Shown here: positions 17,004 to 59,235 of the stretch, piece after piece
Layout: every line of letters starts with the position of its first letter
Numbering within the stretch: position 1 is the first letter of the stretch
Assembly (NCBI GenBank): GCA_964035545.1
Contig: OZ037772.1
Coordinates: forward strand, 8,425,150 to 8,489,149
Direction: 5' to 3'
Source of the DNA: Bugula neritina
Lineage: Eukaryota; Animalia; Bryozoa
Length of the DNA: 64,000 nt
The notes under the pieces: generated by a model
What the model saw: only the letters and a program-made list of their open reading frames with translations
What the model was told of the DNA's origin: nothing
The model's database searches: none
Program-made: the position numbers and the translations under genes

Positions 17004-19047
17004 CTACGCAGTGTGTTTCTTCATATGTGCAAGAAGTTTATCTTTTTGGCTGAATGACTTATTACACACATTGCATAAAAATGGCTTCTCTCCCGTGTGT
17101 GTTCGCATATGTTTGATTAGGGTGCTTTTTCGAGAAAATGACTTATTGCACGTATGGCATAAATATGGTTTCTCTCCGGTATGTGTCTTCATGTGTTGGT
17201 TTAGATTATCCCTGGTACGGAAGTTCTTTGTACAGACATGACATGGAAATGGTTTTTTTTCTGTGTGTGTTTGTAAATGTTGCTGTAAGTTACTTTTCTG
17301 GCTAAAGGATTTTGGACAAATGTGACATGAAAATGGTTTCTCTCCCGTGTGTGTTTTAAAGTGCCGAGTAAGATGTTTCATAATTTTTGTCTTATAGTTA
17401 CACTGAGGACATTTCTTTATACCCTGCTGTTCTTTATTTTTCTCAAGACCAGCTTCTTGCGTTGACTCATAATCACAAACATCATGTAAAGTTGTATTCT
17501 CCTTGATCACTTCTTCTTTCTGATCAAGGACATCTGTAGGTTTGTTGGCAACATTAGGTTCTTTGAGTAGACAGCTGTCATATGGTGTGGCCTCTATTGG
17601 AAAAGAGTTTTGGTTGCTTGTATCAACTTCAAGAACTGAAATGAAAATAAGTTAAGTTTTAAACTAACATGTGGTAATTTTTGTCGTTTTAATAATATCA
17701 TGTGATCTCAGTTTAATTTGCAATTGCAATGAGATAACAAATCTGATGGTCTTTGAGTTATCTATCAAGACACACTCACCTGTTGAAATGACTTTCGTTG
17801 TAGTAGGAAATCCTAAATCTTGATTAACCTGAGAGATAACTTCAGACAGAGAGACATCACATTCTTCTGGTAGAAAACAGTCAAACACTAAATCCTGCTT
17901 TTTGGGATGTTGTGACTCTTGTTGGTAGTTAAAAAGATCTGAATGTCCACTCTCTACCAGTTCTTCCATATAAGTGTCGGATACTGTTGTTGGCATACTA
18001 AGGAAAGTTTGATTGTCTGTATTGACATTAAAACTTTGAGATTCTAAAGTTACAGAATTTCCAGGGGAGCTGCAATTGGTTACTAAAAGATTCCATTCAG
18101 CACCATGCCTTTCTTCGCATGATGACTCCTGTCTGTAATGATTAGGTTCTTTGGATGAATAATCTTCACTTAAAACTTTAAAAGCCACAGAAAAGATTTC
18201 AGACAGAGAATCCTCATGTTCTTCTGGTAGAAAGATCTGAATGTACACTCTTTACAAGTTCTTCTATATAAGAGTCAGATACTGTTTGATTGTATGTATT
18301 GACATTAAAACTTTGAGAGTCTGAAATTACAGAATCTCTCAGAGAATTGTTATTAGTTACTAAAGGATCCCACTCAGCACCACGCCTTTCTTCACACTGT
18401 GGCTCCTGTCTGTAATCATTGTGTTCTTCAGATGGATAATCTTTACCTAAAACTTCAAAAGCTGAAGTAAAGATTTCAGACAGAGAATTATCATGTTCTT
18501 TAGGTGGACAGTGGTTATACACTGAAGTTTCTATGTTAATATAATCCTGAGGGTTTTTATCAACTGTGGAAGTCAGAGGAACTGATTCTGCAGAAAAGCT
18601 GGGAGGTTGAGCAAAGTTGTCCCAGAGAGCAGCAATCTCCCACTCAACATCACTTTCAGAGATCTGGTGAGATTCTTGCATTCTTTTGCTTGAATTTTGC
18701 GGACTCGCTTCTGTTTCTATGACTGAAAGATAATTAAAACGTGTACAAATTTGCATCACAACATATTTTATTAACAAACACAACCACAGACACCAGGCTC
18801 AAATGCTCGCATATTTCGCTCAGCTTGCTCGCTTGCCCACTCACTCACTCCCACGCACACACTCACATACTTAATAACCATAAATGTGCAAAATTAACAC
18901 AAATTTGTACACTCAAACTAAAAAGTTAAAATTTAATCATTCATCTTTCGAAACTGATAAACAATTAGACAGCCGCAAAATATAATCAAGCCAACAACTT
19001 TTTAATTTTTACAGAATGCTATACTTACATGGCTGACGCCCAGACAT
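17004..19047 (-). pseudogene. C2H2 ZNF copy A (5 fingers plus a decayed 6th); frameshifted in exon 2
   Basis: Exon1 19047-19029 (ATGTCTGGGCGTCAGCCAT|gtaagt). Exon2 18722-17780 with a frame break near 18235. Exon3 from 17635 is fused in frame to the finger exon, ending 17004. TGEKPF linkers. Confidence 0.75.
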
Positions 19048-20555
19048 GATGTAAGAACTAAACAGAATTCAGATACGCTTAAAAGAAGAGAAGTTAGTTC
19101 CTAATAAGACTTCGCCGACAAATATCCACTATCAGAATAGTCAGAATCTGATAATTATCTAGCAGCATACCTTCCTGGCTATTTGTTTGTAAATAATCAG
19201 TACAGTTAACTATTGTATATTAAAAAGCTGTTGAAACAATGAGTTAAGTCTATACCTTTGTCCAATGAAAAATTTACCAATAGAGGTCAGCAGTATTCTA
19301 TAGCAAACATCACAGCCACCATCAGTTATGTCAAATTATATCAAATAAAGATGTTGAGATAAAACAGAATTGGCTGACTTATTAATGTGTTTTTCTTGGC
19401 ATACAAATTTGCTGAGTTTATTTCTGAATGCACTCTGCACAAGGTTATTTTGTTTAACAAATTACGATTATTAAAAATGTCATTTATGCACAAATCTGTT
19501 GCTCCAAAGCAGAGTTGCAACAGTATTTTGACTTGACATCAATTATATAAGGTTTTTCTAAAAGTAGGAAATATCATTTCACAAAAAATACTGAATTGCA
19601 GTATGAAAATGAGAAATATATTATAATTATTATATCCGCTGTGAAATAGAAGCTTTCAGAAAACTAAGATTTAAATTCAATGAAATAAAAAATTTTGTTT
19701 CATAACTGGAAACTACTATATTAAAACTATTCCTAGGTACTATATGTGAAAAAAAACATTAATTATAGATAAAATAATACTGAGATATAATGTTTTATAT
19801 AGCATCCTATACATTAGTAAAAAAGAGATAACAACAAATTGCCAAATGTAGATACAAGTACAATTATAGATACTATCCTGCTAATGCTGAGACTTTTCCA
19901 ATTTTCTAGTATTAGCATAACATACAATAAATATTATATTTATATTAGCTATATGCAGACAGATATCTAAACACCCTTACCATTCACCAGATATACAGTC
20001 TATGTACATAATGTCTTTAATAAAACTTCTCGGTATTCTCCACTAACAATTTACATTTAGGTCTATATGGCGTCTATATGATCTTTGTAATGCATAGAAC
20101 GTTTGAGAAAAACAGTTTTCCCAAAACATTTTACTGAAACTTCATAAACGTTGCATTGTATAACATTGCATATATGTTTTTTTATGCAAATTTGGTGAAA
20201 GGTTGTGATCTAACATTATTTAAATGTTTAAATTTAAATGTATTTCTTTGTCTCACACACAACATTTAGACAAAACATTTTTTGCAAACTATTTTACCGT
20301 TTCATAAACTAGTCATACAAACGCTGCCATAACATTACTTTAATAACTTTTTTATTATGTTGTAAACCAATATCATCTAGATGTTGAAATTTAGGCGTTA
20401 TTTAACTTTTTTTATTTAAAACGTTCCATAAACAACTCTCCATAAATGTTATTATAATGTTGTATAAACTCTATGCATCATTGCATTGTTATTATAACCA
20501 TCTGGCAAGGATTTACAAAACCGTTGCTATATGAAAGTATCTATAGCAGTATAAT

Positions 20556-20670
20556 GTATATATATATATATATATATATATATATATATATATATATATA
20601 TATATATATATATATATATATATATATATATATATTATATATATATATATATATATATATATATATATAT
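20556..20670. repeat. (TA)n microsatellite
   Basis: Near-pure TA run. Confidence 0.97.
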
Positions 20671-57130: not shown

Positions 57131-57988
57131 GGCAGATGATCTGAACACTTCCAGAGAACACTGGAAAGAGAACTAGCAAGTTTTGGATATAAAAACTGTG
57201 AGACATTCACTGTAAACTATGAGGCTAAGGTTAAACAATGATTTGTACTGTAACACAGTCATCTAACAGCATAATGTCTTGGCTATATTTGTTTATAATT
57301 AATCATTGCAGCTAGCTATTACACATTGGAAAGCTGATGAAACAATGTGTTAGACCTGTCCCTTTGTCCTTCAAGTATTAGTGGTATACATTTTGTGCAT
57401 GGTTAACAAAATATTCAAAAAGGATGGCCAAGTATTTTTGATAAAAAACATCACAACCCCAATCTGCTGTTTCAAATTAAATTGAATAAACAGTGGAGAT
57501 AAAACTGATAGATAGAAGAAAATGTTTTTATTAAATGAAGATGTGAATAGAACAAGATAGAGAAAATTTTGTTTTATATCTCATGTTTTCACTAAGAATA
57601 CTACAACTTCAGTAACATAAAAATATTAGAGCAAGACCTAAGTACTGTACGACATAAAATTTCAATAAACTAAAAAATACAGAGATTTTATGCCCTAGAC
57701 TATATATTGTGTTATAGCAAGTATCTTAAAAAACAATTTCAATAAAAGATAAAAACAAACTGTCAGCTGTAGATAGAATAAATATTACTTCTGCGCCTTG
57801 CATGTCTAGGTTTTTGTTACTACAGAAATGTACATAGAAATAAAGATGCTTCCTTCTTATTTTATCGGTGAAGTTCAATTTAGAATAATTTTCAACTATC
57901 ACCATCAGAGAGGCAACGTTCCTGTGCGTGCCTTTCTATAAAAAAAACTTGCAGTTCAATATATATAGCCAATTTGTAGTAGTTTATA

Positions 57989-59235
57989 TTATGGTAGCGT
58001 AGATTGATTTTTAGTGTGTATTTTATTGTGTAAATAAAGGTTAGCTTTTTGGTTGAATGATTTATTACACACATTGCATAGAAATGGTTTCTCTCCTGTA
58101 TGTGTCCTCATATGTTGTTGTAGAAGAGCATTGCGACTGAATGCACTTTTACAAATATGACATGGAAATGGTTTTTCTCCAGTGTGTGTTCTCAAATGTA
58201 CAACAAGATTCGATTTTTGAGTAAATGACTTATTACACACATTGCATAGAAATGGTTTCTCTCCATTGTGAGTTCGCATATGTAAAACTAGACCACATTT
58301 TCGAGTGAATGATTTCTTACACACATTGCATAGGAATGGTTTCTCTCCATTGTGAGTTCGCATATGTAAAACTAGACTACATTTTCGAGTGAATGATTTC
58401 TTACACACATTGCATACAAAGAGTTTCTCTCCTGTATGTATCCTCATATGCCGTTTCAGGGTAGTTCTGTGACTGAATGAATTTTTACAAAAATGACATG
58501 GATATGGTTTCTCTCCGGTGTGCGTCCTGATATGACTGATGAGAGCATTTCTCCAGGCAAAAGCAGCTCGGCATATTTCACATATAAATGACTTTGTTCC
58601 AGTATGCTTTATCATGTGCCGGTTGAGATTACCCATGTGTCTTGTCTTGTAGCTACATAGCGAACATTTAAAACATTTCCTCTCAATCTGCTGCTCTGTA
58701 TTCTTCTCAACACCAGCCTCTTGTGTTGATCTACACTCACACACATCATAGACAGTTGTCTTCTCTTTGATCACTTTTTCTTTATGATCAAAGAGCTCTA
58801 TAGATTTTTTGGCAAAGTTATACACTTCTTGATCAGTCTGAGTTTCTTTTTTATATGCACTGCTGCTTCTAATATTGCCTTAAACATGCATAATTTTTGT
58901 TGAAAAAAAAACACATGCTTTTAATTCTGCTACCCATGTGTGCCTAATTCTTTACAGAATTTTACACAATTTTAAAAACAGTCATGATTTGATGGAGCCG
59001 GATTATTACATTCGCTTCAAAACGTGCATATCAGGTTGTTGAACATTATTTTGACATGTGTTAAACAAATACTAACCTGATGATTTGTAGTCCACTGAAA
59101 GATTCCATCCTAAAACTTTAAAAACCGCAGAAACGGTTTCAGACAATGGATTATCAGGTTCTTCAGGTAGAGAGTGGTCATATGTTGAAGCTTCTCTAAG
59201 ATGAGAGTGTTGGTTGCTTGCATCAACTGTGGGAA
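57989..59235 (-). pseudogene. ZNF copy I: exon 3 (59235-59077) plus an 8-finger exon (ORF 58825-57989); exons 1-2 not found
   Basis: Eight intact fingers; exon 3 is open, with motif LPEEPDNPLSETVSAVFKVLG. Homology to the family stops near 59375 and the normal finger-exon acceptor is missing. Could still be expressed. Confidence 0.65.

What the first reader, a model, noticed from the sequence alone, without database searches (positions are those of the whole stretch)
17004..59235. Rapidly turning-over C2H2-ZNF cluster with an unrecognised N-terminal region: possible KRAB-ZFP-analogous system
Seen: nine finger arrays (5-8 fingers) plus a single-finger relic in ~42 kb, in both orientations. They share one architecture (19-nt exon 1, large acidic exon 2, small exon 3, single finger exon, phase-1 introns). 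Only B, F and H are clearly intact. Known: an effector exon plus one finger exon, clustering and birth-and-death evolution are hallmarks of KRAB-ZFP (tetrapod) and ZAD-ZNF (insect) families; KRAB-ZFPs repress transposons. Inference: an independent lineage-specific equivalent, with function untested.
Basis: partly seen in the sequence, partly recalled or inferred. Interest (0 to 1): 0.8.

Follow-up and report, generated by a model that had tools for sequence, protein, structure and literature searches.

The report
Bryozoan-specific zinc-finger gene cluster
A 42-kb stretch of a Bugula-type bryozoan genome holds nine copies, three of them intact, of a four-exon zinc-finger transcription-factor gene whose acidic N-terminal part carries a repeated short motif found nowhere outside Bugula; this looks like another independent "effector plus finger array" family, but its function is untested.

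Summary
There are nine C2H2 arrays of 5-8 fingers in both orientations, plus a one-finger relic at 21029-21092. All share one gene plan: a 19-nt exon 1, a 666-672-nt acidic exon 2, a small exon 3 and one finger exon, with GT-AG introns all in phase 1. Only B, F and H stay open, at 534, 609 and 517 codons.

The N-terminal region matches no Pfam family and no PDB chain. A profile search of 1.84 billion proteins found real relatives only as short fragments, and every one I traced came from Bugula neritina data. Divergent B. neritina members also pair the motif exon with a finger array. The region is predicted disordered, with 2-4 copies of a conserved 23-residue motif, so it looks like a docking motif rather than a folded domain.

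DNA-contact residues change about four times faster than the finger scaffold, but omega is about 0.7-0.9, so positive selection is not shown. B. neritina has only about 67 poly-finger ORFs genome-wide, so the family is small. The KRAB analogy holds for architecture and turnover. Repression and transposon targeting remain inference. An acidic activation domain is about equally compatible.

The parts
17004..19047 (-). Unit A, decayed. Exon 1 is 19029-19047. Exon 2 is 17780-18722, with an internal tandem duplication of the motif-1 segment and a frame change near 18230-18250. The first half of exon 3 (from about 17636) is fused in frame to a 5-finger exon that ends at 17004.
21029..21092 (+). Single-finger relic. 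This is the last finger and 3' flank of a lost unit upstream of B. The stretch 21027-21460 is about 80% identical to 25145-25576.
22268..25224 (+). Unit B, intact, 534 codons. Exons are 22268-22286, 22883-23548, 23709-23747 (a 39-nt mini-exon 3) and 24344-25224 (7 fingers). The array holds an internal 3-finger-offset duplication: 24702-24896 matches 24954-25148 at 91%.
26781..29683 (+). Unit C, a 90% identical tandem copy of B with a period of 4508 bp. Exons are 26781-26799, 27410-28075, 28250-28288 and 28890 onwards. A premature stop at 29627-29629 falls inside finger 6.
30349..31129 (+). Unit D, a partial duplicate. It has the finger exon only, starting inside the pre-finger segment, with 7 fingers in an open frame. 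It has no exon 1, 2 or 3 and no acceptor site.
32290..43560 (+). Unit E, dead. Exon 1 is split by a retroelement: ATGT lies at 32290-32293 and the last 13 nt at 40290-40302. Exon 2 is 41039-41708 with a frameshift near 41170. Exon 3 is degenerate (about 41896-42000). The finger exon starts at about 42657, has lost a Cys in finger 1, has a stop at about 43401 and has lost the final His.
45154..48121 (+). Unit F, intact, 609 codons. Exons are 45154-45172, 45663-46334, 46488-46646 and 47142-48121 (8 fingers).
49242..51800 (+). Unit G, dead. Exon 1 is 49242-49260. Exon 2 is 49843-50157, with an in-frame internal deletion that leaves 315 nt. Exon 3 is 50307-50468. The finger exon starts at about 50961, has Cys-to-Gly in finger 1, a frameshift in finger 2 (near 51350-51390) and a stop. 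G is the inverted duplicate partner of H.
54531..57130 (-). Unit H, intact, 517 codons. Exons are 57112-57130, 56032-56703, 55729-55887 and 54531-55234 (5 fingers).
57989..59235 (-). Unit I, 5'-truncated. Exon 3 is 59077-59235. The 8-finger ORF is 57989-58825, but its pre-finger segment is cut short. There is no exon 1 or 2 in the window.
23077..23547 (+). Example of the conserved N-terminal motif in unit B, exon 2: motif 1 at about 23095-23163 and motif 2 at about 23452-23520. The 23-residue core is LPEEPDVPLSEVISEAFxVLGLN. Across the window and the B. neritina loci there are 23 distinct instances. Full-length members have a third copy in exon 3.
22611..22789 (+). (GTGA)n microsatellite in intron 1 of unit B. 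The same array sits in intron 1 of C (27121-27316), E (40456-40960), F (45385-45579), G (49655-49761) and H (56821-56901), with 20 to 126 copies.
22018..22267 (+). Conserved 5' flank and putative promoter of unit B. Blocks in it are shared by all seven units that keep exon 1, including distant A.

Best explanation
This is a cluster of segmentally duplicated members of a C2H2 poly-zinc-finger transcription-factor family. So far the family is seen only in Bugula (phylum Bryozoa).

Shown:
- Each gene has four exons: a 19-nt coding exon 1, an acidic exon 2 of about 670 nt, an exon 3 of 159 nt (39 nt in B and C), and one exon with a spacer of about 95 residues followed by 5-8 fingers.
- All introns are phase 1, so exons 2 and 3 can be lost, shortened or duplicated without breaking the frame.
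- Units multiply by tandem and inverted duplication. They decay by frameshifts, stops, deletions and one retroelement hit. Three of nine are intact.
- The finger scaffold is under purifying selection, while contact residues change about four times faster.

Inferred:
- The N-terminal 270 residues or so are an intrinsically disordered acidic tail. Its working parts are 2-4 copies of a 23-residue motif (LPEEPDVPLSEVISEAFxVLGLN) that forms a short amphipathic helix and docks a nuclear cofactor. The fingers supply a DNA address that differs from copy to copy.
- My best guess for the outcome is silencing of young repeats, as for KRAB and FiNZ families (about 0.35). Transcriptional activation through an acidic activation domain follows closely (about 0.3).
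For: Anatomy and intactness.

Duplication structure: B and C are 90% identical over 3.7 kb; D is a partial copy; G and H are inverted repeats at 88-94%.

The N-terminus has no known relative. A profile search of 1.84 billion proteins found 8 real hits, all short fragments. The seven traced come from B. neritina assemblies: GCA_010799875.2, JGI 3300002729 and 3300003318, and SRR4020081/83/85.

Divergent members (28-38% identity in exon 2) on L002, L005 and L006 still have the motif exon followed by a 5-6 finger array. The motif-plus-array pairing is therefore old and conserved.

AlphaFold2 gives mean pLDDT 40.5, with helices only at residues 73-79, 162-176 and 188-198; the first and last are the motifs. 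Exon 2 has pI 4.1-4.7. The motif core is conserved in 19-21 of 23 distinct instances, while the rest of exon 2 drifts at dN/dS 0.63-0.71. Motif copy number varies from 2 to 4 per exon 2 (P0001).

Fingers: contact-site omega is 0.66-0.89 against 0.23-0.25 for the scaffold in 21 disjoint pairs. In pooled nearest pairs it is 1.07 against 0.33, Fisher p = 8e-9.
Against: There are no transcript or expression data. All related contigs are genomic, and the spliced models rest on consensus splice sites and frame logic only.

Contact-site omega is not above 1, so relaxed constraint explains the pattern as well as an arms race. Several compared copies are pseudogenes.

Exon 2 between B and C has dN/dS of 1.07.

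The family is small: 67 ORFs with at least 5 fingers in all of B. neritina.

Nothing identifies the cofactor or the sign of regulation.
Confidence: 0.7

Rival explanations
1. These are activators rather than repressors. The acidic, disordered, motif-repeat N-terminus would be a classical acidic activation domain, and the family would drive host genes, for example stage-specific or zygotic programmes, rather than silence transposons.
For: Net charge is -12 to -23 and pI 4.1-4.7. Bulky hydrophobic residues (L, V, I, F) sit in an acidic Ser-rich context, with helical propensity only at the motifs. The motif is present in 2-4 copies. From general knowledge, not tested here, these are the features that predict activation domains in large-scale screens. 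All units share a conserved promoter, which fits co-regulation.
Against: KRAB and FiNZ are also Glu-rich yet repress (PMC10547256). Rapid gain and loss together with diversifying contact residues is more typical of repeat-directed repressor families.
Confidence: 0.3
2. The motif is a leucine-rich nuclear export signal or another localisation or stability signal, not an effector. The core ISEAFxVLGL fits the hydrophobic spacing phi-x3-phi-x2-phi-x-phi. The N-terminus would then control when the DNA-binding part is nuclear.
For: The spacing fits in the last motif of exon 2 in F, H, P0004, P0005, P0006 and P0008. The export-signal consensus is recalled from memory and is a lead only.
Against: That consensus is loose and matches many amphipathic helices. 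Motif 1 and the exon-3 copies in G and H break the pattern. Three copies of an export signal in a DNA-binding factor would be odd.
Confidence: 0.08
3. The cluster is a largely dead relic. It would be a recently expanded segmental duplication that is decaying neutrally, and the open frames of B, F and H would simply not have been hit yet.
For: Six of nine units are broken. B and C exon 2 have dN/dS of 1.07. B. neritina contigs L004 and L009 are also decayed copies. There are no expression data.
Against: Finger scaffold omega is 0.23-0.33 even across deep pairs. The motif and the motif-plus-array architecture persist in members only 28-38% identical. Three complete four-exon models of 517-609 codons with perfect splice sites and a conserved promoter are unlikely without selection at dS of 0.3-0.4.
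Confidence: 0.12

Closest known systems
KRAB zinc-finger proteins (tetrapods and coelacanth)
   Same: An N-terminal effector is encoded on separate small exons and all fingers sit in one 3' exon. Genes lie in tandem clusters in both orientations, are born and die quickly, and vary most at finger positions -1, 2, 3, 5 and 6.
   Different: There is no KRAB domain (Pfam scan negative). The N-terminus is a disordered repeat of short motifs, not a folded box of about 75 residues. The host is a bryozoan. The family is far smaller. TRIM28-type recruitment and transposon targeting are untested.
FiNZ zinc-finger genes of cyprinid fish (Wells et al. 2023, PMC10547256)
   Same: Both are lineage-restricted poly-finger families defined by a short, acidic N-terminal sequence with no similarity to known domains. 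FiNZ is conceptually the nearest precedent.
   Different: FiNZ is a single 28-residue N-terminal sequence in about 700 zebrafish genes, with knock-down evidence for transposon derepression. Here a 23-residue motif is repeated 2-4 times inside an acidic region of about 270 residues, the family has at most tens of members, and there are no functional data. No FiNZ model was available for a direct sequence comparison.
ZAD zinc-finger genes (insects)
   Same: Both are lineage-specific clustered expansions of an N-terminal module plus a C2H2 array.
   Different: ZAD is a zinc-coordinating, four-Cys dimerisation fold. No zf-AD match and no such Cys pattern are found here, and the region is predicted disordered.

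Membership tests
C2H2 poly-zinc-finger proteins (Pfam zf-C2H2 / zf-H2C2_2) | Tandem C-x2-C-x12-H-x3-H fingers joined by TGEKP-type linkers | tested here: met
   zf-H2C2_2 scores E = 8e-55 to 7e-66 and zf-C2H2 E = 4e-31 to 6e-40 for B, F and I. The 53 complete finger units tabulated (stop-interrupted ones left out) have invariant Cys and first-His positions; one unit has lost its last His.
KRAB-ZFP | KRAB A/B box (PF01352) at the N-terminus | tested here: not met
   No KRAB hit even at E <= 1 for six exon-2 ORFs, or at E <= 0.1 for ten family members.
KRAB-ZFP | Effector on separate 5' exons, all fingers in one 3' exon, clustered genes with rapid turnover | tested here: met
KRAB-ZFP | Recruits the TRIM28/KAP1 corepressor and silences transposons | not testable with these tools
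   This needs tethering assays, interaction proteomics and ChIP.
ZAD-ZNF | zf-AD domain (PF07776), a four-Cys zinc-binding dimerisation fold | tested here: not met
   No Pfam hit. There are no conserved Cys pairs in the exon 2 alignment. The model is disordered, with pLDDT 40.5.
SCAN-ZNF and BTB-ZNF | SCAN or BTB/POZ domain N-terminal to the fingers | tested here: not met
   No Pfam hit.
FiNZ-ZNF | 28-residue FiNZ sequence at the N-terminus; restricted to cyprinid fish | not tested
   No FiNZ profile or sequence was available from a tool. The profile search of 1.84 billion proteins returned no fish protein, which argues against homology. The nearest relatives are bryozoan.
Bugula motif-ZNF family (proposed here) | One or more copies of the LPEEPDVPLSEVISEAFxVLGLN motif, encoded upstream of a single-exon C2H2 array on the same strand | tested here: met
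   Window units A-C and E-H. B. neritina loci L002, L005 and L006 have intact finger arrays and L009 a degenerate one.

The most novel reading that the evidence does not exclude
The repeated PLSEVISEAF-type motif is a new, independently evolved silencing module. It might, for example, dock HP1 or a corepressor directly: the stretch P-D-V-P-L just before the helix fits the loosest P-x-V-x-L form of the HP1-binding pentamer. That resemblance is recalled from memory, is not tested here, and does not fit stricter versions of the consensus as I recall them. If true, Bryozoa would have their own transposon-targeting zinc-finger defence, a further independent origin beside KRAB and FiNZ.
Probability: 0.25. 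Interest if true: 0.7.

Novelty: new variant of a known kind. Interest (0 to 1): 0.5.

Why it matters
Only a few lineage-specific zinc-finger families have a recognised effector part (KRAB, SCAN, ZAD, FiNZ), and they shape current ideas on how genomes police transposons. A bryozoan family with its own motif-based N-terminus would be another independent origin of the same gene plan, in a phylum where gene regulation and genome defence are essentially unstudied.

The family is also small enough, at tens of genes, to be studied gene by gene. The motif gives a handle for finding the cofactor.

It also corrects annotation. In the B. neritina draft genome, one such N-terminal exon is annotated as a stand-alone 78-residue hypothetical protein.

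Tried and rejected
1. Word search with exon 2 alone (candidates limited to 117-373 aa) gave one Logan fragment. Word search with the pre-finger segment (159-506 aa) gave nothing. That blank says nothing about full-length proteins of 517-609 aa, so I relied on the length-free profile search and a motif-centred profile.

2. Two scans of JGI metagenome contigs, with the motif alignment and with an exon-2 alignment, confirmed nothing. One attempt failed for lack of a conserved stretch.

3. P0009, a 1732-aa bacterial repeat protein, was rejected as a chance acidic-repeat match. The LTI65 PGEED and DUF7743 Pfam hits are below cut-off and compositional.

4. My first candidate for exon 1, an ATG next to the microsatellite, was rejected because its phase and stops disagree between copies. 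The real 19-nt exon lies further upstream.

5. The finger at 39013-39075 is not the family relic, because it lies in the retroelement.

6. No fold search was run, because the model is too poor (pLDDT 40.5).

7. Rfam and ARAGORN find no RNA genes.

8. Paper searches for the SRA run numbers and the JGI sample number found nothing. A search for bryozoan zinc-finger expansions found no description of this family.

9. Exact look-ups of eight window ORFs found none in the protein collection.

Every search was exon by exon, by reference. Joining was used only inside a script, to count frame and stops.

11. The contig is not human-like: about 30% GC, with bryozoan relatives.
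Full report
**Setting.** The window is about 30% G+C except for an 8-kb block at 53-62%. It is eukaryotic, intron-bearing and not human-like. Every sequence relative that I traced comes from the bryozoan Bugula neritina:
- the NCBI draft assembly GCA_010799875.2 (contig VXIV02000580.1; protein KAF6037386.1, 'hypothetical protein EB796_004300 [Bugula neritina]');
- two JGI samples (3300002729 and 3300003318);
- Logan assemblies of SRR4020081, SRR4020083 and SRR4020085.

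These identifications rest. That the SRR runs are B. neritina is my inference: the draft-genome paper cites the 2016 Illumina study SRP081292, but I could not link the run numbers to it. The best nucleotide identity between the window and those contigs is 82-87%, and no window ORF is in the protein collection. The source is therefore a bugulid bryozoan, either B. neritina itself (a cryptic-species complex) or a close relative. I cannot tell which.

A six-frame scan finds nine C2H2 arrays.

| Unit | Strand | Fingers | State |
|---|---|---|---|
| A | - | 5 | exon 2 frameshifted; exon 3 fused to the finger exon |
| B | + | 7 | intact, 534 codons |
| C | + | 6 | stop in finger 6 |
| D | + | 7 | finger exon only |
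| E | + | 5 plus degenerate | exon 1 split by a retroelement; frameshift; lost Cys; stop |
| F | + | 8 | intact, 609 codons |
| G | + | about 6 | lost Cys; frameshift; stop |
| H | - | 5 | intact, 517 codons |
| I | - | 8 | lacks exons 1 and 2; pre-finger segment cut short |

- The one-finger relic is at 21029-21092. It is the last finger and 3' flank of a unit that is otherwise gone.
- A further finger-like match at 39013-39075 lies inside a retroelement ORF and is unrelated.
- Exon-2 homologues exist for A, B, C, E, F, G and H.
The string ATGTCTSTGAYTMAACCAT followed by GTAAGT occurs once upstream of each of these units, with 6 matches against 0 expected by chance; A has a more divergent copy.
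- The exon-2 acceptor is conserved, and the frame stays open from it in all seven copies, including a 3-nt insertion in G.
- The exon-2 donor, both exon-3 sites and the finger-exon acceptor are canonical, and all are phase 1.

The lesions in the other six units are documented. G also has an in-frame deletion in exon 2. I never searched or folded a joined product. All searches were exon by exon, by reference.

**How the cluster grows and decays.**
- B and C are tandem copies, 90% identical over 3.7 kb with a period of 4508 bp.
- D is a partial re-duplication of the finger exon.
- G and H are an inverted pair, 88-94% identical in the finger exon.
- Arrays change internally. B carries a duplication offset by three fingers, and D has one finger more than C.
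- Between F and H, dS is 0.07 in the first 55 codons of exon 2 but 0.63 in the middle, which indicates gene conversion.
- B. neritina contigs L004 and L009 are likewise decayed copies.
- Because all introns are phase 1, exons 2 and 3 are symmetric. Shortening exon 3 (B, C), deleting part of exon 2 (G) or fusing exon 3 to the finger exon (A) keeps the frame.

**The N-terminal region.**
- Exon 2 is acidic, with pI 4.1-4.7 and net charge -12 to -23.
- It matches no Pfam family. KRAB, SCAN, zf-AD and BTB models were all in the library. It matches no PDB chain.
- A profile of eight copies, searched without length limits against 1.84 billion representative proteins, found nine hits at E <= 0.001. 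One is a bacterial chance match. The other eight are short fragments, and the seven traced come from Bugula data.
- A motif-centred word search added three more clusters from JGI data: P0011 and P0012 and P0013.
- AlphaFold2 on a 10-sequence alignment gives mean pLDDT 40.5. The only helices are at residues 73-79, 162-176 and 188-198, and the first and third coincide with a repeated motif.
- Collecting all instances gives 23 distinct copies with the core LPEEPDVPLSEVISEAFxVLGLN. Core positions are conserved in 19-21 of the 23.
- Full-length members carry two copies in exon 2 and a third in exon 3. One B. neritina ORF carries four.
- The rest of exon 2 drifts, at dN/dS 0.63-0.71 among B, F and H and 1.07 between B and C.
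- Members only 28-38% identical in exon 2 (L002, L005, L006) still place the motif exon 0.6-2.5 kb upstream of a 5-6 finger array.

This is therefore a real family, defined by a short linear motif in a disordered acidic tail rather than by a folded domain.

**Fingers.**
- Variability is highest at helix positions 2, 5, 3, 6 and -1, with entropy 2.6-3.4 bits. The Cys, first-His and Leu-4 positions are nearly invariant.
- In 21 disjoint nearest-finger pairs, contact codons have omega 0.66, or 0.89 against pooled dS (bootstrap 0.60-1.37). The scaffold has 0.23-0.25 (bootstrap 0.17-0.33).
- A pooled, non-independent set gives 1.07 against 0.33, Fisher p = 8e-9.
- Contact residues therefore change about four times faster than the scaffold, which is clearly constrained. 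Positive selection is not demonstrated, and several compared copies are pseudogenes.

**Scale.** Wells et al. (PMC10547256, Supplemental Data 1) count 67 ORFs with at least five fingers and 3,235 retroelement ORFs in the B. neritina draft. That is near the low baseline for the animals shown in the part of the table I read. This family can hold at most tens of genes, and the eight window arrays with open reading frames of at least five fingers would be a sizeable share of that count.

**Interpretation.** The proteins are almost certainly sequence-specific DNA-binding factors whose N-terminal motifs dock a cofactor. Which cofactor, and with what sign, is open.
- Analogy with KRAB and FiNZ, the turnover and the fast contact residues favour repeat-directed silencing. 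I put this at about 0.35.
- The composition (acidic, with bulky hydrophobic residues in repeated helical motifs) is what activation domains look like, so activation is nearly as likely, at about 0.3.
- An export-signal reading and a dead-relic reading are less likely.
- Two resemblances are recalled from memory and are leads only. The P-D-V-P-L stretch fits the loosest HP1-binding pentamer. ISEAFxVLGL fits an export-signal spacing.

**Comparison and novelty.** The gene plan works like KRAB, FiNZ and ZAD families, but membership of each tested family fails on its defining domain. FiNZ, a short acidic lineage-restricted N-terminal sequence, is the closest precedent. I found no paper describing this family. 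I rate it a new variant of a known kind, with moderate interest because there are no functional or expression data and the family is small.

Noticed in passing
window 32291-40289: An 8.0-kb LTR retroelement at 53-62% G+C sits in a genome of about 30% G+C. Its 391-nt LTRs (32291-32681 and 39899-40289) differ at 3 positions, and I see no clear target-site duplication. The domain order is gag (weak zinc knuckle), protease, RT/RNase H, integrase, which is the Ty3/gypsy order. The pol region is in at least four ORFs in different frames. A 711-codon ORF follows the integrase core. It opens with the integrase C-terminal SH3, is otherwise unknown, and includes one finger-like motif at 39013-39075. The element sits exactly inside the 19-nt coding exon 1 of unit E.
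   Followed up: partly
window 1954-9004 (-): Exons of a sodium:solute symporter (SSF/SLC5-type) gene lie next to the cluster on the minus strand. Pfam SSF hits: E = 6e-9 for 8584-8805 and E = 1e-3 for 7098-7352.
   Followed up: partly
window 22611-22789, 27121-27316, 40456-40960, 45385-45579, 49655-49761, 56821-56901: A (GTGA)n microsatellite occupies the same place in intron 1 of every unit that keeps it. Copy number runs from 20 to 126. It may favour unequal exchange between units, or it may simply be inherited with the duplication.
   Followed up: no
window 22380-22470 and 26890-26980: An insertion in intron 1 is shared only by B and C. Its minus strand carries a GGTTCGAATCC, box-B-like string and looks tRNA-derived by eye, but ARAGORN and Rfam (E <= 1) do not recognise it.
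   Followed up: partly
window 45704-45868 versus 56498-56662: The first 55 codons of exon 2 in F and H have dS of 0.07, against 0.63 in the middle of the exon. This suggests a gene-conversion tract across the 5' ends of two units in opposite orientation.
   Followed up: no
L006 9962-13105 (B. neritina VXIV02000580.1): In the public annotation the N-terminal exon of this family member is a stand-alone 78-residue hypothetical protein (KAF6037386.1). A 315-codon finger ORF lies 2 kb downstream, with an RT fragment of another retroelement in the intervening intron. The gene is probably mis-annotated.
   Followed up: partly
L004 (SRR4020083) 589-1788: This is an H-like copy in B. neritina data, 82-84% identical to window 56350-55652 and 54496-53977. 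It lacks the about 1.15 kb in between, so the whole finger exon is deleted.
   Followed up: partly
window 20557-20671 and 13500-13603: Two long (TA)n tracts of about 58 copies, similar to each other, sit in the most AT-rich part of the window (24% G+C at 20-22 kb).
   Followed up: no
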